IMG/VR virus record: IMGVR_UViG_3300046536_000256
Location: 62,001-126,000 of that record
DNA length: 64,000 nucleotides
Direction: 5' to 3' (one strand)
A program made the translations under genes and the position numbers. Shown one piece after another: positions 1,747-61,912 of the stretch; positions within the stretch are counted from its first letter, which is position 1; each line of letters starts with the position of its first letter. The notes under the pieces are model-generated. The model did not search any database. It had not been told where the DNA came from and saw nothing but the letters and a program-made list of their open reading frames with translations.

Positions 1747-1780
1747 TACTACTCCTCTAGCCTAGGCTAGAGGAGTAGTA
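1747..1780. terminator. Perfect 34-bp palindrome between convergent genes (bidirectional terminator)
   Basis: tactactcctctagcct|aggctagaggagtagta, followed on + by cgtttatgtttg. Confidence 0.85.
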
Positions 1781-1793
1781 CGTTTATGTTTGG

Positions 1794-2534
1794 TTAGTTG
1801 TCATCCCAAGGATCAGACTGAATAATCCAGCCCGGGTATTGGCGGTCGATCTCTTTCATTTGCTCAGAGAACGACAACAGATATTCCCGATCCACATGCG
1901 GGATATGGTCGATCATGTTTTCTGGGTGGCCGATGACCAGCATGAGGTTCTTCCCGGACATCATCCCAGGGTTCTCATGCGCTCTACCCACCAGTTGCTG
2001 ATGGATAAGCCAATAGATGTGGTGTGCATCGTCCACATCCATTGGCCAAGTGCTGTGGTGGGTCAGGTAATTAAGGACAGCCCCGATGCCAGCCAACGCA
2101 CCATGGACAGGTTCGTTAACATCGGGTGGAAGGAAACGCTCAAGCGAGACAGTGATACAACCAATACGACGCTCGTCCCCACGCGCTTTATAGGTTTCCC
2201 AAGTTCCGCGGAGGAAGTCTTTAGGGAAACGGTATTCTTCGTAACCTTTAATAAAGTCACGACCAGGTTTATCGGGATTACCCTTAACCTCTTTGCGTAC
2301 CTGTGATGCCAGTTCCAGTTGCTGCTTACGCGATAAAACAATCTCGCCCTCCTCGTTAACTTCAGCAGCCTGAACCACTGGCTGCAACAACCGTTCCCTT
2401 ACTATTTCCATCAGTTGCTTAAGGGTTGGCAGGGAGCGTTCTTTAAAAGCAGGCGGGATGTTGGAGATCTGTGCGAATGTCATGCACCCCAAGAGTTCAG
2501 CTAACTCTTCATTGCTAAGTGGTTTCTCGTTCAT
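1794..2534 (-). CDS. Hypothetical protein; N-terminal helical module shared with two neighbours
   Basis: 246-aa ORF with an AAGGA SD; no recognisable family. Confidence 0.8.
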   Translation of the reverse strand: MNEKPLSNEELAELLGCMTFAQISNIPPAFKERSLPTLKQLMEIVRERLLQPVVQAAEVNEEGEIVLSRKQQLELASQVRKEVKGNPDKPGRDFIKGYEEYRFPKDFLRGTWETYKARGDERRIGCITVSLERFLPPDVNEPVHGALAGIGAVLNYLTHHSTWPMDVDDAHHIYWLIHQQLVGRAHENPGMMSGKNLMLVIGHPENMIDHIPHVDREYLLSFSEQMKEIDRQYPGWIIQSDPWDDN

Positions 2535-2602
2535 CTTTCAAATCCTTGTGTAGAAGACAGTGGAAACCGCGGGGCTAAACAACACCCCACGGAGTACAGT
2601 GT

Positions 2603-4390
2603 TTACCAGGTGGTGGCCGATCCACTGATCGGTGCTAACCAGAAACGATCGGGGATCAGTTCTTCGTTAGACAGGTCAGTGTAAATGATCCAACCTTTGA
2701 TTGCTGAATCAGGGAACGCAACTTGCAAGCCTTCAGGCATCGCCGCCACGAGACCGTAAGCGAAGTTCAGCACGGTGAACTCAGACGAGCTGATTGGTTT
2801 GCTGGCCAGTGCGGCTTTAACCTCGTCAGAGATCGTTTGATGTCCATTACGGGTAAACCTCAGTTCAGAGATACTGGTGATCAAGGTGTCGAAAGTATCT
2901 TCGATTGTGTCTGACACCTGGAACTTGAACGTTTGCAGCGGGTACTTCAAACTACCCAAGGTCTCGATCAAACCCGGGTATTGAACCCACTCGGCGCCTT
3001 CCGGGTATTCGAGCCGTTGGAGAAGGTTACCAATGCTAGTGCAGTTGTAAACGACCGAACCCTTTGTGTCTAGGTTAGTCGTGTGCTGGGCCACGTTCCC
3101 TGTATACGTGTCGATTGCCATACCCACAAACCGTTCATTACGCGGCAGTCCCAGAGGGGTTAGGTCATAACCACCAACTTTGCTCCCAGCGATTACTGCG
3201 TGGTAACGATTGTTGACATTTGTCATAGCACCCATGAAAGGACTGAACGGGAATTCAGCGTGCCCGAAACTGTTGTACCGCTCGTTGGCATAGTTCCCCG
3301 GCCCCGCTGGCATGCTGAACTCAGGGTTCTTCTGCCACGCACCCATGTGATCTTTAACGTATCGCGGACCAGCCAAACGTTCTTTCACCAACTCTAACAG
3401 TTCCAAACCAGCAGGGTTGTTAGCCCCACGCATCTGCGCCGGCATTGGGCGGATCTGAGTGAGTGAGTAGAGTTCCAGAAGACCCACGATGTCGTTATTG
3501 GTAACACGCCCGTACGGGTCCATCGGACCACCGGGCATCATGAACATGCGGTTAGGGCTGAAGCTGTTGAATGGGTTGAGTGGTGGGTTGGAGTTATTGA
3601 ACATCCCATATGGGTGCGGGGTTGGTTTGACCATGCTGTCAGTTACCCCGGCAACGAATCCATTGGATCCCAGTTCAATGGTGTAACGGTCGACACAGGT
3701 GAATTCCCAGCCTGGATGACCGATCTCTTTCCTTTCCCAGAGCTTGGCGGTGACAGTGTACCGATCAATGAGCTGGGTCAGCAGAGGCATGGACGGAACC
3801 ATCGTGTTAATGACGGCGGTTGCATCCAATTCGTCGATGAAGAAACCGGTGTTGACCAAGTGAGTTTTCAGGAAGTTCAGGTCAATTCCCTGTGGGGTCA
3901 TGAACTCGTTCAAAGTAACGGTCATGGTCAAAGGTTTCTGTGGTTGAGTTTGCATGGTGTCAGTACCCTTCTTTGGTGTAAGGTTAGAAATGAACAGTTG
4001 GGTTCGTTTGGTTTTGTTTCTGGTGCCTTTTACGCAGTATTCCAGGTGGTAATCGATCAGCTTCATTTTCGAGCCGAGTACCAAAGTTACTTGGTTTTTC
4101 TGCAACCCGCCAATGTCGCAAAGCAGCCCCGGTAGTCGCTCACTGAGATCTTGTCGAACTAGCTTGCGGCCGGTCTCACCCACCGGCCAGAGACCGTCGC
4201 GGTCGCAACCGTCCAGAACCTTACACAGGCTCTCCATGAACGAGTTGGGCGCTTGCGCCATCAGACTATTCAGATCGATCTGAATGAAGTCGTCTTTTAC
4301 AGTCAAGCTTGCGTGTCCAGTAGAACCTTTCCCCAAACCAATGAACAGGTCGAAAAATCTTCTACCAACTGATTGCCGTTGGTTCTCCAT
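2603..4390 (-). CDS. Hypothetical protein with a central M/N/P/F-rich low-complexity region; possible internal start at 3955
   Basis: Long ORF; the best start is ATG 4390, preceded by AAGGGGG. Confidence 0.75.
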   Translation of the reverse strand: MENQRQSVGRRFFDLFIGLGKGSTGHASLTVKDDFIQIDLNSLMAQAPNSFMESLCKVLDGCDRDGLWPVGETGRKLVRQDLSERLPGLLCDIGGLQKNQVTLVLGSKMKLIDYHLEYCVKGTRNKTKRTQLFISNLTPKKGTDTMQTQPQKPLTMTVTLNEFMTPQGIDLNFLKTHLVNTGFFIDELDATAVINTMVPSMPLLTQLIDRYTVTAKLWERKEIGHPGWEFTCVDRYTIELGSNGFVAGVTDSMVKPTPHPYGMFNNSNPPLNPFNSFSPNRMFMMPGGPMDPYGRVTNNDIVGLLELYSLTQIRPMPAQMRGANNPAGLELLELVKERLAGPRYVKDHMGAWQKNPEFSMPAGPGNYANERYNSFGHAEFPFSPFMGAMTNVNNRYHAVIAGSKVGGYDLTPLGLPRNERFVGMAIDTYTGNVAQHTTNLDTKGSVVYNCTSIGNLLQRLEYPEGAEWVQYPGLIETLGSLKYPLQTFKFQVSDTIEDTFDTLITSISELRFTRNGHQTISDEVKAALASKPISSSEFTVLNFAYGLVAAMPEGLQVAFPDSAIKGWIIYTDLSNEELIPDRFWLAPISGSATTW

Positions 4391-4478
4391 GTTGATCCCC
4401 CTTAGATTTCGATAGTGACGCCGTCGGTTGGTTTGACCACGTTTGCCATTAATAAAGTCCATCGATGTAGAAAAGAAA

Positions 4479-4528
4479 AACCCTCTAACTCTATTAGTGC
4501 TTGGGTGAGAAAATAGAGTTAGAGGGTT
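4479..4528 (-). terminator. 17-bp stem / 16-nt loop hairpin with a U-rich tail on the minus strand
   Basis: aaccctctaactctatt ... aatagagttagagggtt, preceded on + by aaaagaaa. Confidence 0.7.
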
Positions 4529-4532
4529 GATG

Positions 4533-5285: not shown

Positions 5286-5314
5286 GTTAGGTTACCCTTG
5301 TTTGAAATGAGACA

Positions 5315-5345
5315 AAAATAAAGGGGCGCGCAACGCCCCCCTTTT
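5315..5345 (-). terminator. Intrinsic terminator
   Basis: GC-rich hairpin ggggcg...cgcccc flanked by A and T runs. Confidence 0.7.
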
Positions 5346-5358
5346 ACCGCGTCGACCA

Positions 5359-5730: not shown

Positions 5731-5786
5731 TGATCAAGTCCTTGTATAACGGGATAGGAAAGTTATTTGTGTTACTTATGTACCCT

Positions 5787-5806
5787 AGTTATATAGACCT
5801 GAAAAA
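5787..5806 (-). promoter_or_regulatory. Early (virion-RNAP)-type promoter
   Basis: Minus strand TTTTTCAGGTCTATATAACT resembles the phiKZ early consensus (T-run ... TATATTAC); related motifs occur at 11349 and 61463. Confidence 0.65.
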
Positions 5807-5824
5807 GAATATAAGTTAAATTTA

Positions 5825-6052: not shown

Positions 6053-6106
6053 ATGGGGTGCCTCTAAATAAAGGGTGTTGTGTTGAAAAGAAAGGTCAAG
6101 CAAACA

Positions 6107-6137
6107 TAACTCAGGGGCTTTGGTGGCCCCTGAGTTA
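6107..6137 (-). terminator. Hairpin terminator with TATG tail
   Basis: taactcaggggc...gcccctgagtta; minus-strand tail TATGTTTGC. Confidence 0.75.
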
Positions 6138-6148
6138 ATGTCCGTTAC

Positions 6149-8505: not shown

Positions 8506-10158
8506 TTATTCGCGACGCTTCAGCCTGTTACTGGTCGACTCATATAACTCTTTGAACTCGGGAGCGAGTCCGGTTACTTTGTCGTTGATCAGATGGAGGC
8601 ATGGTGTCAGATACCCTCGTCCGTCTGGATACGGGTTAGTCACCCGCAGGTAACTGTTTACGAAAGGCAAGGAAGGGTGAGTGAAGCACGCGCTGTCAGT
8701 TGTATCAAAATCACCGCGCTTCTTCTTGTTGCCTACCCCGGTATAGACCTTGTGCTGTGGCATGCATCCCAACACATAATCGATGAACGGATTATCTGTC
8801 GGTGTCGGTTCCTGAATGAGATTGGTCGTTCGCGCATTGTCAATCTCCTTGATGTGAAAATTGTTATTAAGGAACCGGGACACTTTCTTCTGGCTGAGTT
8901 CCGAGTTGTTCTTGATGTCGTGTTTGAAACTGTTGGCGGCTGTGATCAGCTTGTCCAACGTGAATTCCAAACTCGCCAGCTCTTTGTAGAGCATGGAGGC
9001 ACGATCGGTTGTCTGAACGATCTCACTGCGGTTAGCAATGATGTAGTTAAACAAATCGAACATGTTCGACACCACGATGGACTGGGACGCGAATTTCTTA
9101 ATCGAGTCTTCGTCCAGGTACTCGTTGATCGAGTCAAAGTGCTCATACATTAAACGCATGATGTACTCGTTACTGTCTCCCGCTTTCACGGAGCAGCGAC
9201 CGATGATCAACTTCCAGTAGTCCGGGTTGTCAATGCTGTCAATATCAAAGTACGAGGAAAGGCAATCAATGACAAACAACAACGCCCCGGCATACTGCAA
9301 CGCCATAGAGCTCAGCTCTTTACGCTTATCGGACTTGTTCCGTACCGCCACGGCATAGTCGTGGCCTACGAAGTCACCCAAAGAACGCGAGTTAGGCGAA
9401 CTGGAACGGGTGATAATTTCCCAACGATCCCCTGGTTTGCATTCCGCAACCAAAGCATCGGTAGGTCCGATCTCAAAGTCACACTCGCCATACTGTTGCA
9501 TGGCTTTGGTGAACCCCATATCCGCAAAGATGTACCAGGCTAGTAAAGGCGTAGGGGTTTTGGTGTCCTTGATCTTCCTGGCTTCCGTCGGGCTATAAAA
9601 CCGATTGGCTGCCAAGTTGATGTCGGCGGTTCGCGTCATGTTGCTACCGGTCTCAGAGAACACTTGGTCGTACTTAAAGTGCTCCACACCGATCTTGAAC
9701 TTGAACCCCAAGACTTTGACGAACAGCGAGTTTTCCTTAGTGACGGGTAGTCCACGTTCGGCTAACACGAATTGCAAGCTGTAATGCACGCCTCGTAACC
9801 ACAGATCGCCATGCTTGTCGCAATACGGCAACATGACATACACTGGGTTCAACGCGATAATCTTGCCAGCCTTGTCCATGTACTCGAACATGATCTTGCA
9901 AGGGTACAGCGTCTCCTTGTGAATGTCGAAGATCTTAGCGCTCGACTTAATGAGATACTCGTTGTATTCCCGAGGCGATACCCGCTTCACGTCCCGGAAG
10001 AATACCCCGCGCTTTTCAATGCTCTTGAAAATCAATCGAAGTGAATGGTCGAAATAATGAAGACCTTTCTCAAATTCCTTTTGATGAAAACCGTCAACAA
10101 TTACCTGATTGAATTTCGGCATTGTTGCTTCAATAGGTCCTATTAGCCTTGGGTGCAT
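8506..10158 (-). CDS. Non-virion RNA polymerase beta-like subunit, N-terminal part (phiKZ gp123-like)
   Basis: N-terminal MPKFN..IVDGF, LWLRGVHY...VLAERG and C-terminal HPS...GRGYLTP motifs; lies two genes downstream of the major capsid gene. Confidence 0.8.
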   Translation of the reverse strand: MHPRLIGPIEATMPKFNQVIVDGFHQKEFEKGLHYFDHSLRLIFKSIEKRGVFFRDVKRVSPREYNEYLIKSSAKIFDIHKETLYPCKIMFEYMDKAGKIIALNPVYVMLPYCDKHGDLWLRGVHYSLQFVLAERGLPVTKENSLFVKVLGFKFKIGVEHFKYDQVFSETGSNMTRTADINLAANRFYSPTEARKIKDTKTPTPLLAWYIFADMGFTKAMQQYGECDFEIGPTDALVAECKPGDRWEIITRSSSPNSRSLGDFVGHDYAVAVRNKSDKRKELSSMALQYAGALLFVIDCLSSYFDIDSIDNPDYWKLIIGRCSVKAGDSNEYIMRLMYEHFDSINEYLDEDSIKKFASQSIVVSNMFDLFNYIIANRSEIVQTTDRASMLYKELASLEFTLDKLITAANSFKHDIKNNSELSQKKVSRFLNNNFHIKEIDNARTTNLIQEPTPTDNPFIDYVLGCMPQHKVYTGVGNKKKRGDFDTTDSACFTHPSLPFVNSYLRVTNPYPDGRGYLTPCLHLINDKVTGLAPEFKELYESTSNRLKRRE

Positions 10159-10170
10159 CTTAACTCCAAA

Positions 10171-11348: not shown

Positions 11349-11367
11349 AATAATGTAGGTCTGAAAG
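11349..11367 (-). promoter_or_regulatory. Early-type promoter for the nvRNAP beta operon
   Basis: Minus strand CTTTCAGACCTACATTATT, about 40 nt upstream of 11307. Confidence 0.65.
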
Positions 11368-11404
11368 ATTCCAATGGAAAAAGTCACCAAGCAAACATAG
11401 ACCA

Positions 11405-11443
11405 CTGCCCTCCCTCACCCCTTTCGAGGTGAGGGAGGGAGCA
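11405..11443 (-). terminator. Terminator after the major capsid gene
   Basis: ctgccctccctcacc...ggtgagggagggagcag; minus-strand tail contains TATGTTTGC. Confidence 0.8.
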
Positions 11444-11539
11444 GACTCTGTTTCAACTCACTTCAACCACAGCCCAACTTGGCATCGGCTTCGTTGACAG
11501 ACAACATCTAAACTGTCAACTGACCGTAGTCAGTAGGGC

Positions 11540-13723: not shown

Positions 13724-13787
13724 GGATTAAAGTCCTGTGAGTTGAACATTTGAAACAAATATATTTGTTTGCGCAAGTTGAGCTGCA

Positions 13788-13795
13788 CATAAAAT
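13788..13795 (-). promoter_or_regulatory. Candidate late promoter (TATG core) for the capsid gene
   Basis: Minus strand TTTTATG about 65 nt upstream of the capsid ATG. TATG is the established phiKZ late consensus, but it is short. Confidence 0.45.
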
Positions 13796-15908: not shown

Positions 15909-15964
15909 TAAAACAGTAACTTTTAATATCGCCATCTATCAGTATTAAATAGACCACCTAAATA

Positions 15965-15996
15965 CCTCCTCTCCGGGTCATTCCTGGGAGGAGGTT
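15965..15996 (+). terminator. Hairpin after dnaB
   Basis: acctcctctccggg...cctgggaggaggt. Confidence 0.65.
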
Positions 15997-16203
15997 AATG
16001 GGTTATATTTGCCTGCTTCTTATTTCCACATCGCCTTATTAGCGAATGCCGGCTACAAAGGGCTACAAAGCGATTACAGCCGTTTTAAGAATACTCCCTT
16101 CTCGTATTAGGGGTTATTCTCTTTAATAGGTTTAACGTGATTGTAGGGGTTACTCTTTTCCCTTCCTGTTAATGGGTTCCCTAGGGAACAGAGCAATAAG
16201 GCA

Positions 16204-16236
16204 TATACCTCTACTCCCAAAAGGAGTAGAGGTATA
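16204..16236 (-). terminator. Hairpin terminator for the minus-strand structural operon
   Basis: tatacctctactcc caaaa ggagtagaggtata; minus-strand tail TATGCC. Confidence 0.75.
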
Positions 16237-16338
16237 GCTTACTGTCAAAAGCAAAGATAGAAGGGGATTGCCCCCACTCGCTCCCGCGTCTTTCCATTAC
16301 TGGTGTATAGACATAAGCACCCAGACAGGAAAATATAT

Positions 16339-21231: not shown

Positions 21232-21262
21232 TCCGGTATGGAAGGGGCTACCCTCCATACCG
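21232..21262. terminator. Intergenic hairpin
   Basis: ccggtatggaagg...ccctccataccgg; followed on + by cgttatgcc. Confidence 0.65.
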
Positions 21263-21275
21263 GCGTTATGCCTGC

Positions 21276-22004
21276 TTAACCGGCTTTCTCTTTATCGCTG
21301 GCATCCAGAAGGCGATACCGCACGAACCACAGATGGTTATCCTCGGTCCGGAAGATGGCGACGTCAGATACACCGTCATTGATCAGTTCCACCACCTCGG
21401 CTTCCAGCATCGACGCAACCGACGGAGAATGCTCGATCGAGACGTGTACGAGATCGGCCGCCAACGATTGAACGAAGCCCTTAGGTAGCCCGCCTGCGCC
21501 AATGACGATAACGTCGTAAGTCGGGAAAGCTTTACTGACCAAAGCCAGCTGAGCCTTCTGTTCTCCCAACGCACAGCACACGGCGATCTTTGGACGATCG
21601 AACTTGGTCTTGTCCTTCACTGTGAGCGGGAAACCGCCTGTGAGGTGAACGGAGTCGGGACTGATCACGATGCTGGCGACGATAGTACCGCTATCACCGA
21701 ACTCAACCGTATGGTCATCCACGCCGTAGTCCACACCCGGGGTCAGGTAAAGGCGGTACTTGGCCGAAATCGCCGCCATCACATCCGCCCACTTATCGCC
21801 TTCGTTGGCAAAGACTTCCGGACGCTGGCCGCCCAAGTAGGTAGTAACATCGAGCTTGGGCATGACCACCCGTTTGACTTCATCACCGATGCGCACGCTA
21901 AAAGCAGACTGAGTCAGTGATTCGACCGTAGCCGATTCGATTACCGAGCCGGACGGTAAACGACTGGTCAACAGGCTAAGAACGCGGGGATGCACGTTAT
22001 TCAT
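21276..22004 (-). CDS. Probable virion protein
   Basis: Start MNNVHPR overlaps the upstream stop codon; lies in a structural operon. Confidence 0.65.
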   Translation of the reverse strand: MNNVHPRVLSLLTSRLPSGSVIESATVESLTQSAFSVRIGDEVKRVVMPKLDVTTYLGGQRPEVFANEGDKWADVMAAISAKYRLYLTPGVDYGVDDHTVEFGDSGTIVASIVISPDSVHLTGGFPLTVKDKTKFDRPKIAVCCALGEQKAQLALVSKAFPTYDVIVIGAGGLPKGFVQSLAADLVHVSIEHSPSVASMLEAEVVELINDGVSDVAIFRTEDNHLWFVRYRLLDASDKEKAG

Positions 22005-24956: not shown

Positions 24957-25029
24957 AAGGAAACCCCTTGTCTGTGGTTAATAGAACATGCCTATAGCAT
25001 CCCCTAAATATCGAAATGCGGCATAAAGG

Positions 25030-25062
25030 CTAAACGCCCAGGGAAGAACCCAGGGCGTTTAG
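25030..25062 (-). terminator. Hairpin terminator with TTTATGCC tail
   Basis: ctaaacgccc...gggcgtttag. Confidence 0.7.
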
Positions 25063-32304: not shown

Positions 32305-35231
32305 TGGCTATGTCCCAAGACGATCTGGAACGATTGGCTAACAACCCACAGCGTGGGATCAACCTGATTGTCGATGAGATCGAAAAGAACTGGTTCAACG
32401 GCACCGTCAAGCTGAACAGTAAAGCGCACCCCGCCGTCCTCTGTATGGATTTGATCCTGGGCACCTCGCATGGTTTCCTGAACCGTCTGAGCGACGCCAA
32501 CAGCAAGGTAGCCCTGAAGCACGCGCGTAACGTCAGCGACCTCAGCCGCAACATGAGTGACGATGAGCGGTTCGGCCTGTTCGCTAACCCTGCCGATTCC
32601 ATGATGCAGTATGCGATTTCGGAAGATGCGTTTAAAGACATCGCCAAAGACGTCACTGTAACCCAAGGCAAAACCACTATGACCTACAAAGTCATATTGA
32701 TTCCAAAGGACACGGTATTCGACGTTAACGGCTATTCCTTCGCGGTGAACAACGGCATCGAACTGCGTTACAGCGAGAAGGCTGGCTGGCAAGCGGTGTA
32801 CGACGAACAAACCAACAACCCGTTCCAACCGATCGGCACTAACCTGATCGACAAGGACAAGAAGTTGGTGAACGGTACAATGTATCGCCTGTTCAACATC
32901 CCCGTTACGCAGTTGGCGATCAAGGCTACCGAGAACATCACTTCCAACGAAGGTTCGGGTTGCCGCGGGACAGTTGACTATCCGGACTACCTGTTCGGTG
33001 TGCGGGCATTCCTGGTGCAGAACGGTGTGTTGTCGGAGATCGCAGTGTCCTTTGACCAGGACGTGTTCGACCCACTGACCGTGACGCTGGCGTTGGACAT
33101 CGACACCGTGAATAACGTATTCAACTACGAGATCCCGGACGTCTACATCACCAACAAGCTAGGCGTGGGTTCCATCCGGATCTACACGTACACCACCAAA
33201 GGTGTATTGTCCAAGAACCTTACCCTGACCCCGTCGCAATCGATTACTCCTAACTACCAGGACTTCCGTTACGGCGCTGGTAAGCTGGGCGATACCTCGG
33301 TCATGCTGCGTAACGCCAAGGGTGCTGCGTGGGCAATGGTTGACGTGACTACCGGGGGTACTAACCCAGTACCGTTCAACGTCATGAAACAAGCGCTGAT
33401 TGACGGCCGTCGTCAACGCAATACCCCGATCACCGAAAGCAACCTGAAAGGCATGGTGGAGAACTACGGTTACGGTTCGGTTAAGACCATCGACTACCTA
33501 ACAGGCCGGGCTTACTCGCTCAGCAAGGAATTGCCTATCCAGGACAACAAGGGCTTCTACGCTCCGATGTCTTGCTACGTGGGCAGTCACTTAGCTTCGG
33601 CGAACGATTTGGTGGGCGCGGGGGTTGTGTTGGACAACGGTAAGCGGATCACCATTCCGCACAACGTGCTGTTCGATATCACCACGCCAACCTCTAAGCT
33701 GGTTAACGACCTGACGAAGAACCGTTACCTGGGCATGACCAGTGATCAGATTGTAGACCTCATGGGTGCAAATACCTTGGTGTACACTCCGTTCTACTAT
33801 GTCTTGGACATGACCAACAACCAAGCGGTACTGCGAACGTATCACCTAGATGCCCCGGTAGTGCGTAACCAGACCTTTGTTGCGGAGAACTCGACACTTG
33901 GGTTTGAACTGGGTGTGGGGTCGATTGCGATTGAGCATGTGGATACGGGTTACCTGATTACAATCGTGACCAAGTCTAACGACGCTTACAAGCAGCTGGA
34001 CAACAACCAGTTGGCGATGCAGCTCAGTATCAGCCCGCAAGACTCCAGCAGCTTGGCTAGCATTGCAGGGACTCTGATTGGGGTGACCGCGGACACCAAT
34101 GAGCGGATCTTCCAGTTTAATCTGGATACGAAGTTTGACGTTGATGTTAACGACATTCTTTACTTCACTAACCTGCATCAATTCGGGGCGGTACAACCAA
34201 GCACAGGTTCTACACTGGCAGTGGACATGACGTTCATCTTCTGCTTCGTGGGGGACATGGAGTTCTCGAAATCGGATTCTGATGCGAAGATCGATCAGAC
34301 ACTGTTCGCCGAGGACATGGTAGCGATCATCGAAACCGCCTACGGGATTACCTTTGGCAAGAAGATGGGGAACCTCTACAGTCGGATTCGTCCATTGGTC
34401 GGTGAAGCCCAGTACTTGCGTTATGCAGCGGATGTTCCTGAAACCTACACGACGAACGTGATGAAGCGTGTAAACGGCGAGCTGGTGTTCGATCCTGACA
34501 CTAACCTACCGATCATGGATCAGGTGGCGGGTCAGATCGTGTACAACGATGACGGCACTCCGCGCTTGCTGTACCGCGCGGGTATCGACGTGGTGTATCA
34601 GGATGGCGTCCCTGTCATGGTGGCTCCTCGAGACTTGAAGTACCATTGGGACTTCATTGCGTTCGACGGTAACTACTTCTTCAGTGACGACCAGTACGAC
34701 ATCCAGTTTGCGCTGGACACCAAGAACTACTTCGTTAACGTGATCAGTAAGGACCTGGAAGCCTTTACCTCGGAGTCGTTGGACCGTACCGAACTGTTCT
34801 ACCAGCCGCGCAGTAAGCTGGGGTATCAGAAGGTTGTGGTTAACAGCAACTACGAGTCGTTCCTCAAGCAAGACTTGGAGTTCACCATCACGTACTACCT
34901 GACGGGCGCTGGGTACAAGAACCAGAACCTGAAGGATGCGTTGTCGGCCAGTTCTCCTCGTGTGATCAACGAAGCGTTATACGGGGCTACCACCATCGGT
35001 ATCACTAACTTCGTAACCAGCTTGATGCAGGACGCTGGCGAACAAGTGGTGACGGTTAAACTCAGTGCAATCTCCGGTGACACAACCGTTGATGTAATCA
35101 GTAACGTGGACAACCTCACAGGCTTCAGTGTTCGTAAGAACTTGAAACTCTTGGGGGATGGCGGCGTAGGTGTTAAGGAAGCGATTGACATCATCTTCCT
35201 GCCGCACGACGCCAGCGTCGCTGGAGCATAG
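32304..35231 (+). CDS. Large baseplate (wedge-like) protein (gp87-like)
   Basis: 975 aa, beta-rich; TTGG.N...PITE and YTPFYYVLD motifs; synteny. Confidence 0.65.
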   Translation: MAMSQDDLERLANNPQRGINLIVDEIEKNWFNGTVKLNSKAHPAVLCMDLILGTSHGFLNRLSDANSKVALKHARNVSDLSRNMSDDERFGLFANPADSMMQYAISEDAFKDIAKDVTVTQGKTTMTYKVILIPKDTVFDVNGYSFAVNNGIELRYSEKAGWQAVYDEQTNNPFQPIGTNLIDKDKKLVNGTMYRLFNIPVTQLAIKATENITSNEGSGCRGTVDYPDYLFGVRAFLVQNGVLSEIAVSFDQDVFDPLTVTLALDIDTVNNVFNYEIPDVYITNKLGVGSIRIYTYTTKGVLSKNLTLTPSQSITPNYQDFRYGAGKLGDTSVMLRNAKGAAWAMVDVTTGGTNPVPFNVMKQALIDGRRQRNTPITESNLKGMVENYGYGSVKTIDYLTGRAYSLSKELPIQDNKGFYAPMSCYVGSHLASANDLVGAGVVLDNGKRITIPHNVLFDITTPTSKLVNDLTKNRYLGMTSDQIVDLMGANTLVYTPFYYVLDMTNNQAVLRTYHLDAPVVRNQTFVAENSTLGFELGVGSIAIEHVDTGYLITIVTKSNDAYKQLDNNQLAMQLSISPQDSSSLASIAGTLIGVTADTNERIFQFNLDTKFDVDVNDILYFTNLHQFGAVQPSTGSTLAVDMTFIFCFVGDMEFSKSDSDAKIDQTLFAEDMVAIIETAYGITFGKKMGNLYSRIRPLVGEAQYLRYAADVPETYTTNVMKRVNGELVFDPDTNLPIMDQVAGQIVYNDDGTPRLLYRAGIDVVYQDGVPVMVAPRDLKYHWDFIAFDGNYFFSDDQYDIQFALDTKNYFVNVISKDLEAFTSESLDRTELFYQPRSKLGYQKVVVNSNYESFLKQDLEFTITYYLTGAGYKNQNLKDALSASSPRVINEALYGATTIGITNFVTSLMQDAGEQVVTVKLSAISGDTTVDVISNVDNLTGFSVRKNLKLLGDGGVGVKEAIDIIFLPHDASVAGA

Positions 35232-35240
35232 TTGCAAACA

Positions 35241-35288
35241 TAACCCCCACCCATGCCTTCCTTAACGGGGGCATGGGTAGGGAGTTAC
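35241..35288. terminator. Bidirectional terminator between convergent genes
   Basis: acccatgcctt...ggggcatgggt; minus-strand tail TTATGTTTGC. Confidence 0.75.
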
Positions 35289-39468: not shown

Positions 39469-41250
39469 ATGGAACCAAATAGCTCACCCATAATTGCTAA
39501 AGTGTGCAAACATGCCGCTCAGTCGATTAATCGTTTTGACAAAAGTAAAGATTTGCTGTGTGCCAAGATCACCAATATTCATGAAGATGGCTCACGCTCC
39601 AATTCGCTGATAGCCCTTGAGAATTACAAGACGCCTATCTGGATCGTTAAGGAAGATAAGCGTAAGTTCAAACAGCACAAAGATTACATCGAAGAAACCA
39701 TGTGCAAAGAGTACAAGGTACCTCGTTGTCAGTTGGCCGCCGCAATCAACAAGTTCTATTATGGCCGGGTTGATAGCTCTTATGACATTCGTCAGGCTAA
39801 GAACAACCCCCACGTATTCGGGTTAGACCAAACCCCTCCAGTTCACTTCAAACGCAAGTACTTTGAGCGTTACGGCGACCATCAGGAAACTGAGGCTTAC
39901 AGCTTAGCGGCTTACGACGTTGAAGGCGACATGTTCAAGAAGGGCGTGCCGGTCATGATGGCCTCGGTAACCTTCAAGACCAAAGCCTACTTCGCAGCCT
40001 GCCGTGGTTGGTATTCGGAGAAGGCTGGTAAACGCTTAACCGATGCCGAGATCCTCAATGGCTTGAAGGAAGCCGAATACGCTCACTTGTCGGGACACCT
40101 TAAACGTCGTAACTGTACTGTTGAGTATGAACTCTTCGATACAGCCGGTCAGGTAGTTAAAGCGTGCATTGACAAGATGCATACGTGGCAGCCAGATTGG
40201 GTAGCCGCTTGGAACGCAGCTTACGACATGCAGGCTAACGAAGATGCATTGTTGGCTGACGGTTACAACTTGGCCGACGTGTATTCCGATCCGAGCATTC
40301 CAAAAGAGTACCGGTCGTATAAGTTTCACCCGGGTCGCACACACAAGCATAAAGAAGATGGCACGAAGATGCCGTTGGAATGGCAAGAGCGTTTCCCAAC
40401 GATTCGCACCATGGCCACTTGGCAAATGGCGGACGCTGGTTCGTTCTACGCGATTAAGCGGCAGCCGGTTGAAGGTAAGCTTCAGGATACGTCGTTACAA
40501 GGCATTGCTACAAAAGAAGACGTGCCAGGCAAGCTGTACACCGCAGAAGGCGCTGAGCAAGGTGTAGGGTCGCCGCAGTGGCACCGTTACATGCAGAAGA
40601 ACTTCCCGTACATCTACTCCATGTACAACATCTGCGATAACTTTGTAATTGAAGAGATCAATGAGAAGACCAGTGACTTCAGTCTCTCGTTACCGATGCT
40701 GTTGAAATACTCGGAATACTTCAACTACGTCTCTCAGCCAAGCATGATCTCGGATACCCTGTCGTTCATGGCAAGAGAGCGTGGGTTTGTGTGGGGGTCG
40801 ACTCCAAGCAACCGGGATAAACAGTTCTCTGAGAAACTCCCAACTCTGGGCGATTGGATTGCGTTGCTCGATACTGAGAAGAACGCCTCGTTTGGTAAAC
40901 CGTTGTTTGCGGGTCTGGACGATGTGTTCAGTAACGGTCGAACAGATACGTCAGACATTGACGTGGAAGGTGCATACCCAACAGCTACACTGGCATTGAA
41001 TGCCGGGGGTAAGACGACCATGGCAGAGGTCTACGGGATTCAGGGCGCAGACCCCATGAAGTTCCGGGAGATCGCGGTGAACTATGCCAGTAGTACGCAG
41101 GCTAACGCATTCGGGTTGTGTCATGACCTGTTCCGTTTCCCTGCCCCTAAAGATCTGAAGAAGGTCTTTGAAGCGGCATTGATTGCACAAGGCAAAGAAG
41201 AAGAACTGAAGAAACTGCAAGAAAACGAAGCAATGAAAAGAGCCGCCTAG
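39469..41250 (+). CDS. Split family-B DNA polymerase, exonuclease-containing half (gp82-like)
   Basis: ExoI YDVE, ExoII WNAAYD, ExoIII YNICD and a motif-A-like DIDVEGAYP near the C-terminus. Confidence 0.85.
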   Translation: MEPNSSPIIAKVCKHAAQSINRFDKSKDLLCAKITNIHEDGSRSNSLIALENYKTPIWIVKEDKRKFKQHKDYIEETMCKEYKVPRCQLAAAINKFYYGRVDSSYDIRQAKNNPHVFGLDQTPPVHFKRKYFERYGDHQETEAYSLAAYDVEGDMFKKGVPVMMASVTFKTKAYFAACRGWYSEKAGKRLTDAEILNGLKEAEYAHLSGHLKRRNCTVEYELFDTAGQVVKACIDKMHTWQPDWVAAWNAAYDMQANEDALLADGYNLADVYSDPSIPKEYRSYKFHPGRTHKHKEDGTKMPLEWQERFPTIRTMATWQMADAGSFYAIKRQPVEGKLQDTSLQGIATKEDVPGKLYTAEGAEQGVGSPQWHRYMQKNFPYIYSMYNICDNFVIEEINEKTSDFSLSLPMLLKYSEYFNYVSQPSMISDTLSFMARERGFVWGSTPSNRDKQFSEKLPTLGDWIALLDTEKNASFGKPLFAGLDDVFSNGRTDTSDIDVEGAYPTATLALNAGGKTTMAEVYGIQGADPMKFREIAVNYASSTQANAFGLCHDLFRFPAPKDLKKVFEAALIAQGKEEELKKLQENEAMKRAA

Positions 41251-41257
41251 CAGCCAT

Positions 41258-41297
41258 ACCCTCACCCATTCCCCTTTGTCGGGGAATGGGTGAGGGT
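41258..41297. terminator. Bidirectional terminator
   Basis: accctcacccattcccc tttgtc ggggaatgggtgagggt. Confidence 0.85.
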
Positions 41298-41310
41298 TAT
41301 TCACGGTTGG

Positions 41311-43411: not shown

Positions 43412-43447
43412 GGTGGATTCCCCAGTTAAGCAAATATAAAGGAATAG

Positions 43448-43477
43448 GCCGGGATAACCTTTTACAGTTATCCCGGC
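43448..43477 (-). terminator. Hairpin terminator
   Basis: gccgggataac...gttatcccggc. Confidence 0.7.
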
Positions 43478-45272: not shown

Positions 45273-45323
45273 TGAAAGGGCCCTTTCGTATGAGTAATAG
45301 GCAATATAGGACGTGATGTCATA

Positions 45324-45360
45324 GAATATCCCCAAGGAGCAAGGCCCCTTGGAGATATTC
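45324..45360 (-). terminator. Hairpin with TATG tail
   Basis: gaatatccccaagg...ccttggagatattc; minus-strand tail TATGAC. Confidence 0.65.
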
Positions 45361-50763: not shown

Positions 50764-50794
50764 ACCCTACCAACCCGTAATGGGTTGGTAGGGT
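50764..50794. terminator. Bidirectional terminator
   Basis: accctaccaaccc gtaat gggttggtagggt, followed immediately by tatg. Confidence 0.8.
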
Positions 50795-50802
50795 TATGGT
50801 CG

Positions 50803-51830: not shown

Positions 51831-51866
51831 AATGCGAATACCTCTGAGTGTAGGGAATCAAACATA

Positions 51867-51897
51867 TTCCTAACGAATCCGTGAGGACCGTTAGGAA
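51867..51897 (-). terminator. Hairpin with TATGTTTG tail
   Basis: ttcctaacg...cgttaggaa. Confidence 0.65.
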
Positions 51898-51915
51898 CAT
51901 AGGTTTATTGGGTAA

Positions 51916-52398
51916 TTACAGATCGATCAGTCCAGACAACATGAACATGACCTTATTACCCATGTGGGTCGTGGAAAAGTTCAGTTTAGCCGTGTACTCC
52001 GGCGTACGCAACATGTCCCCCAGGACCATGAGTGTCGCCATGTCATTGAATTGCGAGATGGTCTCTACTGCGAGACACAGTTTCATCGTAACAAAGGAAA
52101 CGAACTCCGGCAGGTTGGCCAGGTATTCCGGGGTAGTAATGTCGGTCCCGGTTTTCTCATCCATCTCTTTCATTACTTCCATGAGGAACTCGATCGACGC
52201 CATCAGGTTACTGTCTGGGTCGTCGGCGTAGGTTTCCGGATCATCGACCACCGGCATGTACAGCGACATGGCGCTGGGGATGTCTTTCACTACGTTGTAC
52301 AGCGCTTCAATAAGAATGAAGGCCAAGAAGTCTTCATGGATATCGGAGTAGAGCTCACCTCGGGTTGCGGGGTTCAGATTGATGGTTAGGCTTTTCAT
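51916..52398 (-). CDS. Hypothetical protein
   Basis: 160-aa ORF with overlapping start/stop. Confidence 0.7.
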   Translation of the reverse strand: MKSLTINLNPATRGELYSDIHEDFLAFILIEALYNVVKDIPSAMSLYMPVVDDPETYADDPDSNLMASIEFLMEVMKEMDEKTGTDITTPEYLANLPEFVSFVTMKLCLAVETISQFNDMATLMVLGDMLRTPEYTAKLNFSTTHMGNKVMFMLSGLIDL

Positions 52399-55979: not shown

Positions 55980-56921
55980 TCAAAGCGGTATCCTTTCGAA
56001 GGTATACCCCTTATAGCTGGATCTCTTTTGAGCGATAACATCGGCCACTAACCTTCTGTGAAAGTTCATATTCTTTAATTCTTTTCGCCCAACTATAACT
56101 ATTTGCTCTCCAGTTTCTATATGTGTCGCAAGTAGCTTCGTTGTGACGTAAGGATTTATTGAAAAGAGGTTATTCTTGACCTCGTCATTTAAGCCATGGG
56201 GAAGGGTCTTTAGATCTTCCGGAGTCGCCATCGAGAACTGACAACTCTTATGTTTTCTAAAGCCGGATCCGACTGATCCAAATATTCTTGTGGCGTCGAA
56301 ACCGGAAGCTTCCGCCTCCTTCTTCCCACATATAACAAAGGAATAACCCTTAAACTCTCCAGCCACTACAACACCCTTAACAGGCTTCACTGCGTAATGG
56401 TCGATTCCTACCGGAGATATGAGTAGTCCTGTTTCTCTGGCGTGCCGCACGTTACCTTGTCCAGTAGTCCACTCTAGGTTGAACAAATCGAAATTACTTT
56501 TGACGCCGTCCATGTGGTTGACTTGGAGGTCTTTAGGATGACCTGGTATCTCGAGCGGGACAAATGAGCAGGCTAAGGCCCTATGGAGAGGAACCTTATT
56601 TCTCTGCTTCCCGTTATCTACCATCAGCCTAGGGTATTCCTCCATCATCCACGGTATCAAACGCCCGGTATGTTTATTCTTCTTAAAGGACCAGACTCTC
56701 CCCTTGCTGCTAATAAACATTTTGTACGGTTTAAGAACCTGTTTATCGATGTAGCCATAATAAACAAACGGGACCCACACTTCGTACTCTGGATCCAGTT
56801 CCAGCTTTGCTTTCAAAGCCTTATGCAAAATAGAAAGGTTAAACGGGTATTCAAGTGAGTAATATAGGTTTAAGTCTTGCTCACTTAGTAAATCCTCGGG
56901 TTTATTTGAACTTTCATTCAT
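55980..56921 (-). CDS. Free-standing HNH homing endonuclease
   Basis: LHRALA..F...VNHMDGVKSN...NLEW.T...NVRHA; AT-richer than its neighbours; ATG 56921 has an AAGGA SD (alternative ATG 56939). Confidence 0.9.
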   Translation of the reverse strand: MNESSNKPEDLLSEQDLNLYYSLEYPFNLSILHKALKAKLELDPEYEVWVPFVYYGYIDKQVLKPYKMFISSKGRVWSFKKNKHTGRLIPWMMEEYPRLMVDNGKQRNKVPLHRALACSFVPLEIPGHPKDLQVNHMDGVKSNFDLFNLEWTTGQGNVRHARETGLLISPVGIDHYAVKPVKGVVVAGEFKGYSFVICGKKEAEASGFDATRIFGSVGSGFRKHKSCQFSMATPEDLKTLPHGLNDEVKNNLFSINPYVTTKLLATHIETGEQIVIVGRKELKNMNFHRRLVADVIAQKRSSYKGYTFERIPL

Positions 56922-56932
56922 AACGGTATCCT

Positions 56933-56959
56933 TAACCATCTCGATTGTCGAGATGGTTA
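56933..56959 (-). promoter_or_regulatory. Perfect 12-bp hairpin over the HNH translation-initiation region
   Basis: taaccatctcga ttg tcgagatggtta. Confidence 0.8.
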
Positions 56960-56968
56960 TTTAGGGAG

Positions 56969-56995
56969 TTAGTAGATTCTGGCAACGTGGCGCAT
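56969..56995 (-). pseudogene. Relic 5' end of the SF2 helicase gene / uORF MRHVARIY*
   Basis: AGAGG-8nt-ATG CGC CAC GTT GCC AGA ATC TAC TAA; matches the helicase start MRHVATI at 6 of 7 residues. Confidence 0.8.
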
Positions 56996-57009
56996 TGTAG
57001 CAGCCTCTT

Positions 57010-57041
57010 AACAAAATAAACGAGAACCCCGAAGGGTTCCC
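57010..57041 (-). terminator. Terminator after the nvRNAP beta' gene
   Basis: gaaccc cgaa gggttc with minus-strand tail TTTATTTTG. Confidence 0.7.
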
Positions 57042-57054
57042 GCCATCGGGTGTG

Positions 57055-61406: not shown

Positions 61407-61462
61407 TACAATCTCCTACCCACTAATGCTCTGTTACAAAAAGAAATTGTTACCATATCTAA

Positions 61463-61485
61463 CCTAATGATATAGGTTTAAAATC
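61463..61485 (-). promoter_or_regulatory. Early-type promoter for the nvRNAP operon
   Basis: Minus strand GATTTTAAACCTATATCATTAGG, closely resembling the phiKZ early consensus. Confidence 0.75.
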
Positions 61486-61513
61486 GGTTAACCCCATCTT
61501 TGCAGGTAGCTTT

Positions 61514-61843
61514 ATGCCAATTCCTAACAACGAGATCAATAGCGACAAGGACGTGTTCTTTACCGAAAGCTTCAAGACCCTTGTTCGTTCTGAAAAGGAG
61601 CTACTTAAGCGTTCGGCTCATAGCAAGCCTATCGTTGAAAAGAACGTGCTCTACGCCTACCGTAATGACATCTACCGATTGCTGCGGAGTTTTGAGATTC
61701 CGTCTTATATGTGGTGGGCTACTGCGTACATCAATGGCTTCGAAGACCCCACATCGGACATCACGAACTTGTCAGAGATTTTCATCATCGATGAGTCCGT
61801 GTTGGCTGGAGCCATCTCCCGAAGTAATACAGTTCAGGGATAA
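61514..61843 (+). CDS. Small conserved protein (gp70-like), LysM-like/T4 gp53-type baseplate-wedge pattern
   Basis: Y..D.Y.LL....P.Y.WW.....NG..DP. Confidence 0.6.
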   Translation: MPIPNNEINSDKDVFFTESFKTLVRSEKELLKRSAHSKPIVEKNVLYAYRNDIYRLLRSFEIPSYMWWATAYINGFEDPTSDITNLSEIFIIDESVLAGAISRSNTVQG

Positions 61844-61867
61844 AAAATAAATGAGCCTTAAGAAATG

Positions 61868-61892
61868 GGTAGGGGAGCTCAGCTCCCCTACC
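61868..61892. terminator. Bidirectional terminator
   Basis: ggtaggggagct c agctcccctacc, followed immediately by tatg. Confidence 0.8.
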
Positions 61893-61912
61893 TATGACTT
61901 ATAGCCGCTTAC

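What the first reader, a model, noticed from the sequence alone, without database searches (positions are those of the whole stretch)
1747..61896. Terminator-like hairpins are followed by TATG rather than poly-T: hairpin/late-promoter modules?
Seen: TATG lies at or within a few nt of the hairpin base. On + it occurs at 1785, 21267, 50795 and 61893. On - (cata on +) it occurs at 6105, 11396, 16202, 25022, 35239, 41255, 45320 and 51863, often as TATGTTTG or TATGCC. Exceptions with ordinary tails are at 4479, 5320, 43448 and 57022. Established: TATG is the phiKZ nvRNAP late-promoter core. Inference: this is either a sequence-specific termination or processing signal for the phage RNAPs, or a terminator/re-initiation module. 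Several copies point into convergent genes and would then produce antisense RNA.
Basis: partly seen in the sequence, partly recalled or inferred. Interest (0 to 1): 0.65.

Follow-up and report, generated by a model that had tools for sequence, protein, structure and literature searches.

The report
Phage terminator hairpins with TTATG box
The hairpins after genes in this giant phiKZ-like phage are transcription stop signals that carry a conserved TTAT(G/T) box instead of a poly-U tail; this terminator type has already been mapped in phiKZ, and the TATG belongs to the stop signal rather than being a general restart promoter.

Summary
All 12 hairpins exist (dG -21 to -39 kcal/mol) with TATG at or near the 3' base. 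Across the 233-kb genome, 30 of 83 post-gene hairpins carry TATG, against 2.5-5% of background windows and 11.8 +/- 2.9 in dinucleotide shuffles.

De novo motif search gives TTAT[G/T]TYTG. This is the terminator tail published for phiKZ (hairpin + YTTATKYYGT) and 201phi2-1, so TATG is the G form of a known box.

The box follows the upstream transcript, not a downstream gene:
- It is more frequent at convergent gene ends (74/160) than at co-directional junctions (60/210).
- It is kept at orthologous terminators whose stems have diverged (G stays G in 44/60 pairs), equally in both contexts.

TATG is probably also the late-promoter core in this phage. A hairpin-free TATG upstream of the capsid gene is conserved across genera, TATG is depleted in coding sequence on both strands, and part of the nvRNAP TATG pocket is invariant.

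Verdict: a sequence-specific terminator box, a new member of a known kind. A general re-initiation module is not supported; dual use at a few co-directional sites stays open. No RNA data could be obtained.

The parts
1747..1793 (+). Terminator of the + gene ending at 1732: 15-bp hairpin 1747-1780, then the box TTTATGTTTGG (TATG at 1785-1788). It lies at a convergent junction; the same hairpin serves the - gene 1794-2534, whose tail is TCTATCTTTTATTTTTT.
   Evidence: dG -26.7, z -6.3
6097..6144 (-). Terminator after gene 6149-8365: hairpin 6109-6137 (extended 6101-6144), box TTATGTTTGCTTG (6097-6109, TATG = 6105-6108). Co-directional junction. In the close relative G001 the stem is entirely different but the box is identical. 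G002 and G003 have TATT / TTTATTTTTTT at this site.
11388..11444 (-). Terminator about 100 nt after the major capsid gene: hairpin 11402-11444, box CTATGTTTGCTTG (TATG 11396-11399). An early-type promoter motif follows at 11351-11358.
   Evidence: dG -38.6
16196..16240 (-). Terminator after gene 16339-17679: hairpin 16204-16236, box TATATGCCTTATTGC (TATG 16202-16205). Convergent junction.
21233..21277 (+). Hairpin 21233-21263. On the - strand it terminates gene 21276-22004, with tail ATTTGTTC. On the + strand it is followed by GTTATGCCTGCTT (TATG 21267-21270), which is antisense to both neighbours. This may be a backstop against antisense transcripts, or chance.
25016..25062 (-). Terminator after gene 25094-26344: hairpin 25030-25062, box CCTTTATGCCGC (TATG 25022-25025). 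Co-directional. TTATG is kept in all three relatives while the stems co-vary. It lies 69 nt before the next start codon, so it is a candidate for dual use.
35231..35287 (-). Bidirectional hairpin 35241-35287 between convergent genes. The - strand box is TTATGTTTGCAAC (TATG 35239-35242).
   Evidence: (dG -35.7)
41250..41301 (-). Bidirectional 17-bp hairpin 41258-41297 between convergent genes. The - strand tail is (GGG)TATGGCTGC (TATG 41255-41258); the + strand tail is TATTCACGG.
   Evidence: dG -38
45314..45360 (-). Terminator after gene 45372-45728: hairpin 45324-45360, box TCTATGACATC (TATG 45320-45323). Co-directional. (C/T)TATG is kept in all three relatives. It lies 51 nt before the next start codon, so it is a candidate for dual use.
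   Evidence: z -9.1
50764..50802 (+). Bidirectional hairpin 50764-50794 between convergent genes. The + strand tail is TTATGGTCGC (TATG 50795-50798). TATG is kept in G001 and G002 with different following bases.
51858..51901 (-). Terminator after gene 51916-52398: hairpin 51867-51901, box ATATGTTTGATT (TATG 51863-51866). The downstream gene is an HNH endonuclease.
61865..61900 (+). Bidirectional hairpin 61868-61892 between convergent genes. The + strand tail is CTATGACTTATAGCCGC (TATG 61893-61896).
5300..5350 (-).
43430..43477 (-).
57005..57044 (-). The orthologous sites in G002 and G003 read CTTATGCCC and CTTATGAG.
15964..16015 (+). Terminator of the helicase gene: hairpin 15964-15995 followed by TAATGGGTTATATTTGCCTGCTT. 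The three relatives have T(T)TATGTTTG at the same place.
13788..13791 (-). Stand-alone TATG with no hairpin, 68 nt upstream of the major capsid gene start. It is conserved in G001-G003, RisingSun, phiKp_32 and ZPAH34 and is the likely late-promoter core. Included as the comparator for the hairpin-adjacent copies.
8506..10122 (-). Gene for the nvRNAP beta-like subunit, the homologue of phiKZ gp123, which binds TATG in phiKZ.

Best explanation
These are factor-independent terminators of a phiKZ-like (chimallivirus) phage. They consist of a GC-rich hairpin placed a few to about 100 nt after a stop codon, followed on the transcript side by a conserved box, TTAT[G/T]-TYTG-(CTT), in place of a uninterrupted U tract.

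Shown:
- its enrichment;
- its conservation while the stems diverge;
- its independence from any downstream gene;
- its identity with the tail of terminators whose RNA 3' ends were mapped in phiKZ and 201phi2-1.

Inferred: as the phage multisubunit RNA polymerase leaves the hairpin-coding DNA, the nascent hairpin together with the box ends the transcript within or just after the box, where the TYTG stretch provides a weak hybrid. The fixed A and G/T in the box point to a sequence-specific contribution and not mere U-richness. Whether the box is read as RNA or as DNA is not known.
For: - Placement. Strong hairpins concentrate in the 8% of the genome that is intergenic (113 of 219 with dG <= -16), mostly 1-25 nt after same-strand stop codons.
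- Motif. An unbiased EM search on 82 sense flanks gives T-T-A-T-[G .48 / T .32]-T-Y-T-[G/C]. The anchored logo reads GGG-T-TATG-TTTG-CTT.
- Match to phiKZ. The published phiKZ terminator motif is BCCYCCCCHWWDGGGRRGGBYTTATKYYGT, derived from ONT-cappable-seq 3' ends, and 201phi2-1 motif A resembles it (PMC10914365, PMC11512511). My own scan of phiKZ 100-200 kb gives GGGRGGG-yT-TATG-TCGTTT, with TATG after 26 hairpins and TATT after 11.
- Enrichment. See the observation check.
- Context. TATG occurs at 74/160 convergent and 60/210 co-directional junctions.
- Conservation. At orthologous terminators the type is kept (G stays G in 44/60 pairs, G becomes T in 4), although half of the stems are under 0.7 similar. 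Retention is 23/29 co-directional and 23/31 convergent.
- Polymerases. The genome encodes homologues of both the virion and non-virion multisubunit RNAPs.
Against: - No RNA 3' ends exist for this phage or its near relatives: no RNA run was listed. Termination is inferred from position, conservation and analogy.
- About half of the TATG-type tails have 4 or fewer T in the first 10 nt. A classical weak-hybrid mechanism is doubtful for tails such as TATGGCTGC, TATGACATC or TATGGTCGC.
- TATG is probably also the late-promoter core here, so some copies could fire as promoters.
- The G and T forms are not freely interchanged in evolution, which a simple 'U-rich tail' view does not explain.
- The lower-GC relatives RisingSun, phiKp_32 and ZPAH34 use mostly the T form.
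Confidence: 0.72

Rival explanations
1. Terminator plus re-initiation module. The hairpin stops the upstream transcript, and the adjacent TATG is an nvRNAP late promoter (G = +1) that restarts transcription for the next gene. At convergent ends it would produce antisense RNA.
For: - TATG with G as +1 is necessary for phiKZ nvRNAP initiation (PMC4666361, PMC12809450).
- TATG behaves as a functional word in this clade: a conserved hairpin-free copy sits upstream of the capsid gene across genera; other conserved stand-alone copies lie 43-94 nt before start codons; and it is depleted in coding sequence on both strands.
- Five of 14 pocket residues of gp123 are invariant, including the Phe that stacks on G+1.
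- The hairpin-adjacent TATGs at 25022 and 45320 lie 69 and 51 nt before the next start codon, and that spacing is conserved in three relatives.
Against: - As a general rule it fails. TATG is more frequent where there is no gene to restart (convergent 46% against co-directional 29%), and selection on it is the same in both contexts.
- The sequence upstream of hairpin-adjacent TATGs is a GC-rich stem. Upstream of P119L and of the capsid-gene TATG it is AT-rich. The structural work proposes that ease of melting supplies the missing promoter specificity.
- The box has its own downstream consensus, TTTG-CTT or GCYG-CTT, which stand-alone TATGs lack.
- The T form, TATT, occupies the same place in as many terminators, yet substitutions at any of the four TATG positions sharply reduce promoter activity in phiKZ.
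Confidence: 0.1
2. DNA-level reading. The hairpin-adjacent TATG in the non-template strand is caught by the same beta-lobe pocket of the nvRNAP that recognises the late promoter. This pauses or destabilises the elongating enzyme so that the hairpin can release the transcript. One tetranucleotide would then serve as both start and stop signal, and G-type terminators would be specific for nvRNAP units.
For: - The pocket lies in a core subunit and binds single-stranded non-template TATG, and part of it is invariant in this clade.
- The G form is evolutionarily maintained and not swapped with T, even where the following bases are not U-rich.
- G-type tails are rarer on units headed by the early-type (virion RNAP) promoter motif: 15/73 against 96/249, p = 0.005.
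Against: - After stratifying by junction type, the early/other difference is no longer significant (p = 0.21 and 0.056).
- The T form is equally common and sits at the same position.
- The published structure describes the pocket as incomplete in the transcribing complex.
- With G at the active site, only about 3-8 nt would separate the hairpin from the RNA 3' end, which is shorter than in classical terminators (inference).
- No biochemical data exist.
Confidence: 0.12
3. RNA processing or stability element. The transcript is cut at or near UAUG by a nuclease, and the hairpin protects the new 3' end (or 5' end), so the ends reflect processing and not termination.
For: Hairpin plus an adjacent single-stranded AU-containing motif is a common layout for endonuclease sites and 3'-end protection (general knowledge). 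Sequence alone cannot separate processing from termination.
Against: - In phiKZ these sites were classed as intrinsic terminators from long-read 3' ends.
- The box is strictly on the 3' side in the direction of transcription and is equally used at convergent ends.
- Nothing in this work points to a nuclease.
- From memory, not checked here: phiKZ inhibits the host RNA degradosome.
Confidence: 0.05
4. Chance co-occurrence in T-rich intergenic DNA.
For: The flanks are 40% T, so TAT-containing words are expected more often there than in the genome at large.
Against: - 0 of 1000 dinucleotide-preserving shuffles of the flanks reach the observed count, in each of five genomes.
- The box is conserved at orthologous sites whose stems differ.
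- There is a strand asymmetry: 30/83 sense against 5/36 antisense flanks.
Confidence: 0.01

Closest known systems
Conserved intrinsic terminator motif of phage phiKZ (Putzeys et al. 2024, Microlife, PMC10914365), with the similar motif A of phage 201phi2-1 (PMC11512511)
   Same: - A GC-rich stem-loop directly followed by YTTATKYYGT.
- It sits after genes, sometimes as a bidirectional terminator between convergent genes.
- The phage has its own virion and non-virion multisubunit RNAPs.
- My re-analysis of 100 kb of phiKZ gives the same anchored logo, with K = G in 26 of 37 cases.
   Different: - Here the consensus is TTATG-TTTG-CTT, with the G one position later.
- The stems are less uniformly C-rich in the 5' arm (43 C-rich against 25 G-rich).
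- The genome is 52% GC and belongs to an uncultivated EL/RisingSun-like lineage.
- No 3' ends have been mapped.
- The two papers do not contain the word TATG and do not link the box to the late promoter.
phiKZ nvRNAP late promoter, 5'-TATG-3' with G = +1 (Yakunina 2015, PMC4666361; Chen 2026, PMC12809450; Ceyssens 2014, cited there)
   Same: The same tetranucleotide. A homologous nvRNAP beta-like subunit is encoded in the window, with a partly invariant TATG pocket. A conserved hairpin-free TATG sits upstream of the capsid gene.
   Different: The hairpin-adjacent copies follow the upstream gene, not a downstream one. They are preceded by GC-rich stems, have their own downstream consensus, and alternate with TATT. 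P119L has no upstream hairpin.
Classical bacterial intrinsic terminator (GC hairpin plus a 7-9 nt U tract)
   Same: A stable GC-rich hairpin just after the stop codon. The TATGTTTG subtype is U-rich (6 of 9). Bidirectional use occurs at convergent genes.
   Different: There is no uninterrupted U run (4 or more T in only 3/30 G-type tails). A fixed A and a fixed G/T sit inside the tail. Many tails are not U-rich at all.
Sequence-specific pause/termination signals of phage RNAPs (T7 class II signal ATCTGTT) and promoter-like pauses read in the non-template strand (sigma70-dependent pausing; the core recognition element). Cited from memory, not checked here.
   Same: A short conserved DNA word contributes to stopping a polymerase. 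These are precedents for a promoter-type non-template-strand contact acting during elongation.
   Different: The T7 class II signal works without a hairpin and on a single-subunit RNAP. No evidence here shows that the box is read as DNA.

Membership tests
phiKZ-type conserved intrinsic terminator (hairpin + TTATK box) | A stable GC-rich stem-loop placed just downstream of a gene, in the direction of its transcription | tested here: met
   83 sense hairpins with dG <= -14 lie within 150 nt of a same-strand stop codon, most within 1-25 nt. The 12 listed sites fold at -21 to -39 kcal/mol.
phiKZ-type conserved intrinsic terminator (hairpin + TTATK box) | A 3' box YTTATKYYGT immediately after the stem | tested here: met
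   The de novo EM motif is TTAT[G/T]TYT[G/C]. TTAT occurs in 45/83 sense flanks against 9% background, p = 1e-24. Anchored logos of this clade and of phiKZ are compared.
phiKZ-type conserved intrinsic terminator (hairpin + TTATK box) | C-rich 5' arm and G-rich 3' arm (CCYCCCC...GGGRRGG) | tested here: inconclusive
   43 hairpins have a C-rich 5' arm and 25 a G-rich one in G000. In phiKZ the counts are 32 and 11. This is a tendency, not a rule.
phiKZ-type conserved intrinsic terminator (hairpin + TTATK box) | The host phage is a chimallivirus that transcribes with its own vRNAP and nvRNAP | tested here: met
   tblastn hits to phiKZ gp123, gp178, gp180 and gp149; PhiKZ_MCP Pfam hit at 1e-135 and polymerase phrog_2943; nearest named relatives are RisingSun and EL-type phages.
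phiKZ-type conserved intrinsic terminator (hairpin + TTATK box) | RNA 3' ends map to the motif | not testable with these tools
   No RNA run was listed for this phage. The supplementary tables of the phiKZ and 201phi2-1 studies are not held.
nvRNAP late promoter (TATG, G = +1) | The TATG tetranucleotide | tested here: met
nvRNAP late promoter (TATG, G = +1) | Lies upstream of, and points into, a co-directional gene that it serves | tested here: not met
   6 of the 12 sites in the window and 74/160 convergent terminators in five genomes carry TATG, against 60/210 co-directional ones. Retention is equal in both contexts.
nvRNAP late promoter (TATG, G = +1) | Primary transcripts start at the G | not testable with these tools
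   No RNA data.
nvRNAP late promoter (TATG, G = +1) | The polymerase has the TATG-binding pocket of gp123 | tested here: inconclusive
   5 of 14 pocket side chains (F151, K158, H331, S334, Q466) are invariant in 8 chimalliviruses, including the window protein (p = 5e-5). H185, N186, K190, Y399 and Y406, among others, differ in this clade.
Classical intrinsic terminator (hairpin + U tract) | A run of U directly after the stem | tested here: not met
   A T run of 4 or more occurs in only 3/30 G-type and 8/28 T-type tails. 10/30 G-type tails have 4 or fewer T in the first 10 nt.

The most novel reading that the evidence does not exclude
In chimalliviruses one tetranucleotide would be both the start and the stop signal of the non-virion RNA polymerase. 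The non-template-strand TATG pocket of the beta-like subunit, known from the late promoter, would also catch the TATG that follows terminator hairpins and trigger pausing and release. G-type (TATG) terminators would then be specific for nvRNAP units and T-type ones for virion-RNAP units. This would explain four results: why the G form is conserved without a U tract, why it is favoured at convergent ends, why it is rarer on units headed by the early-type motif, and why TATG is purged from coding sequence on both strands.
Probability: 0.12. Interest if true: 0.75.

Novelty: new member of a known kind. Interest (0 to 1): 0.4.

Why it matters
Chimalliviruses transcribe inside a protein 'nucleus' with two non-canonical polymerases and no host factors, so their stop signals must be self-sufficient. 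How such enzymes terminate is unstudied biochemically.

This work shows that the phiKZ-type hairpin + TTATK terminator extends to an uncultivated, GC-richer EL/RisingSun-like lineage. The box is under sequence-specific selection independent of the stem and of U-richness. Its G form equals the late-promoter core.

Practical uses:
- a rule for annotating transcription units in jumbo-phage metagenome contigs;
- compact terminator parts for engineering these phages;
- a testable question: is TATG read by the same polymerase pocket at initiation and at termination?

Tried and rejected
- RNA evidence. The look-up of sequencing runs listed no RNA run.
- Literature tables. The supplementary TSS/TTS tables of the phiKZ and 201phi2-1 ONT-cappable-seq papers are not held, and Ceyssens 2014 is not held. 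Late TSSs and terminators in phiKZ could therefore not be cross-referenced.
- Hairpin calling. RNALfold-style genome-wide calling gave thousands of weak multi-loop structures and unstable hairpin borders. I replaced it with an explicit stem finder plus energy evaluation.
- Rfam. No family matched in the window.
- Megablast against phage records found nothing; only distant blastn and protein searches placed the phage.
- Early-unit idea. G-type tails looked under-represented on early units (p = 0.005), but the effect weakens after stratifying by junction type. I report it only as suggestive.
- Considered and dropped without a formal test:
  - ATG of the box as the start of a mini-ORF (ATGTTTGCTTGA and similar). 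There is no ribosome-binding site, the hairpin occupies that place, and the T form has no ATG.
  - TTA of the box pairing with the TAA stop codon. The stop codon is usually 5-25 nt from the stem.
- The large protein searches, structure prediction and complex prediction were not needed and were not run.

Full report
**What the window is.** The window is bases 62001-126000 of a 233,283-bp IMG/VR virus record with direct terminal repeats, 52% GC. It has no near-identical phage record. At 64-69% nucleotide identity and about 71% protein identity, its nearest named relatives are Pseudomonas phage EL-type phages and Erwinia phage RisingSun. It encodes:
- a phiKZ-type major capsid protein (11540-13723, -; Pfam PhiKZ_MCP, 1e-135);
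- a divergent DnaB helicase (14376-15908, +);
- the nvRNAP beta-like subunit, the homologue of phiKZ gp123 (8506-10122, -);
- virion-RNAP homologues elsewhere in the genome.

It is therefore a chimallivirus that should transcribe with its own two multisubunit RNA polymerases. This is an inference from homology.

**Check of the observation.** All twelve TATG/CATA positions exist next to a strong hairpin. The hairpins fold at -20.9 to -38.6 kcal/mol, with z-scores of -3.8 to -9.1. With my gene calls, eleven of the twelve lie after the stop codon of a gene on the same strand. Six of these are at convergent gene ends. The copy at 21267 (+) is antisense to both neighbours.

Genome-wide, I called hairpins with an explicit stem finder and energy evaluation.
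- Hairpins with dG <= -16 are strongly concentrated in the 8% of the genome that is intergenic (113 of 219).
- They usually sit 1-25 nt after a stop codon.
- Of 83 such 'sense' hairpins (dG <= -14), 30 have TATG within -6..+14 of the 3' end.
- The comparisons are 5 of 36 antisense flanks, 2.5% of random 20-nt windows and about 5% of intergenic windows away from hairpins (binomial p = 3e-18).

The strictest control shuffles each flank while keeping its dinucleotides. It gives 11.8 +/- 2.9, and none of 1000 shuffles reaches 30. The same holds in three related genomes and in phiKZ. TATG-type tails almost never contain a T run (4 or more T in 3 of 30).

**What the motif really is.** An unbiased EM search on the 3' flanks returns T-T-A-T-[G 0.48 / T 0.32]-T-Y-T-[G/C]. 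Anchored logos read GGG-T-TATG-TTTG-CTT. Frequent variants are TATG-GCYG-CTT and TATG-CCGC.

TATT occupies the same place in as many terminators (36 of 83).

This is the tail of the conserved phiKZ terminator motif, BCCYCCCCHWWDGGGRRGGBYTTATKYYGT. That motif was derived from RNA 3' ends mapped by ONT-cappable-seq, and 201phi2-1 motif A resembles it (PMC10914365, PMC11512511). My own scan of phiKZ 100-200 kb reproduces it and shows K = G after 26 hairpins and K = T after 11.

**Terminator box or restart promoter?** Five lines of evidence bear on this.
1. *Context.* Pooled over five genomes, TATG follows 74 of 160 terminators at convergent ends and 60 of 210 at co-directional junctions (p = 7e-4). 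This is the opposite of what a promoter for the next gene predicts.
2. *Evolution.* At orthologous junctions in three relatives (about 80%, 61% and 60% identity of the neighbouring protein), the stems are replaced or co-vary while the box stays. G-type stays G-type in 44 of 60 pairs and becomes T-type in 4. Retention is 23/29 at co-directional and 23/31 at convergent junctions. Selection on the TATG therefore follows the upstream transcript end.
3. *Other promoters.* At 11396 an early-type promoter motif lies between the box and the next gene.
4. *Sequence context.* phiKZ P119L and the TATG upstream of the capsid gene here have AT-rich upstream sequence and no hairpin. The hairpin-adjacent copies are preceded by GC-rich stems and have their own downstream consensus.
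5. *The T form.* Substitutions at any of the four TATG positions sharply reduce promoter activity in phiKZ.

**TATG is nevertheless a meaningful word in this phage.**
- A hairpin-free ATTT-TATG-TGC, followed by the perfect palindrome CAAACAAATATATTTGTTT, sits 55-75 nt upstream of the capsid gene in this phage, RisingSun, phiKp_32 and ZPAH34.
- A dozen other stand-alone TATGs lie 43-94 nt before start codons and are conserved in all three relatives.
- Against synonymous-codon shuffles, TATG is depleted in coding sequence on the sense strand (354 against 609, z = -14.5, rank 5 of 256) and on the antisense strand (132 against 228).
- Five of the fourteen gp123 side chains that hold TATG in the phiKZ nvRNAP structure are invariant in eight chimalliviruses, including this one. 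They include Phe151, which stacks on G+1, and His331. They make up 5 of only 19 invariant columns (p = 5e-5). The other nine differ in this clade.

The late-promoter meaning of TATG probably applies here as well. Promoter use of some co-directional boxes cannot be excluded, for example 25022 and 45320, which lie 69 and 51 nt before the next start with conserved spacing.

**What remains unexplained.**
- The G and T forms are evolutionarily kept apart.
- The G form is favoured at convergent ends.
- The G form is rarer on units headed by the early-type motif (15/73 against 96/249). This weakens after stratification.
- Many G-type tails are not U-rich.

A speculative reading is that the nvRNAP pocket also reads the non-template TATG during elongation. 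The structure paper, however, says the pocket is incomplete in the transcribing complex, and the geometry looks tight. I give this reading about 12%.

**Limits.**
- No RNA run was listed for this phage.
- The published TSS/TTS tables are not held, and Ceyssens 2014 is not held.
- Gene calls are my own simple caller. It missed one HNH gene, which I added by hand.
- Hairpin borders are blurred by A-U pairs at the stem base, so offsets carry an uncertainty of a few nt.

**Verdict.** The structure is a chimallivirus intrinsic terminator with a conserved TTAT(G/T) box, a new member of a kind already described for phiKZ and 201phi2-1. The identity between the box and the late-promoter core is real and, within the papers I could search, not discussed. 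Its mechanistic meaning is open.

Noticed in passing
window 61468-61475, 56860-56867, about 39435, 11351-11358 and 5789-5796 (all - strand); about 22 copies in the whole genome: A strongly conserved promoter-like motif, TTTCA(A/G)ACCTATATTACT. It lies on one strand only in each of four related genomes, mostly 40-120 nt upstream of start codons. About 10% of terminators are followed by it within 90 nt. It resembles the AT-rich early (virion RNAP) promoter type of phiKZ; that resemblance is from memory and was not tested.
   Followed up: partly
window 13753-13791, - strand (leader of the major capsid gene 11540-13723): A stand-alone TATG (13788-13791) followed by the perfect 19-nt palindrome CAAACAAATATATTTGTTT (13753-13771). 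Both are conserved in Erwinia phage RisingSun, Klebsiella phage phiKp_32 and Aeromonas phage ZPAH34. They may be the late promoter plus an operator or leader hairpin of the capsid transcript.
   Followed up: partly
window about 45275-45292, - strand: The palindrome GAAAGGGCCCTTTC lies directly before the start codon of gene 44616-45272 and is kept in all three IMG/VR relatives. It is a possible translational control hairpin or protein-binding site.
   Followed up: no
whole genome (coding regions): TATG is among the most depleted tetranucleotides in coding sequence relative to synonymous-codon shuffles, on both strands (about 0.58 of expectation). The same is seen in a close relative and, on the sense strand, in phiKZ.
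   Followed up: yes
window 55980-56939 (-) and 51321-51830 (-): Two HNH homing-endonuclease genes (Pfam HNH_3/NUMOD4, PHROG 59/17657). The first has atypical codon usage, was missed by my gene caller, sits between two terminators, and has the best-scoring early-type promoter motif in the window. It looks like a mobile insertion.
   Followed up: partly
window 15909-16338: A 430-nt non-coding gap lies between the convergent helicase gene and gene 16339-17679. It has two separate terminators (15964-15995 on +, 16204-16236 on -) and about 200 nt of unassigned sequence between them. No ORF and no Rfam hit.
   Followed up: no
window 11445-11539, - strand: The capsid gene has a 3' untranslated stretch of about 100 nt before its terminator. 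It contains a second inverted repeat (GTTGACAG...CTGTCAAC) and is partly conserved in the closest relative.
   Followed up: no
L047 (RisingSun), L048 (phiKp_32), L049 (ZPAH34): In these lower-GC relatives (37-48% GC) the post-hairpin box is mostly the T form (TTATT, TTTATT). The G form occurs in only 1-2 of 8-10 terminators per 25 kb, so the share of TATG-type terminators differs between lineages.
   Followed up: partly
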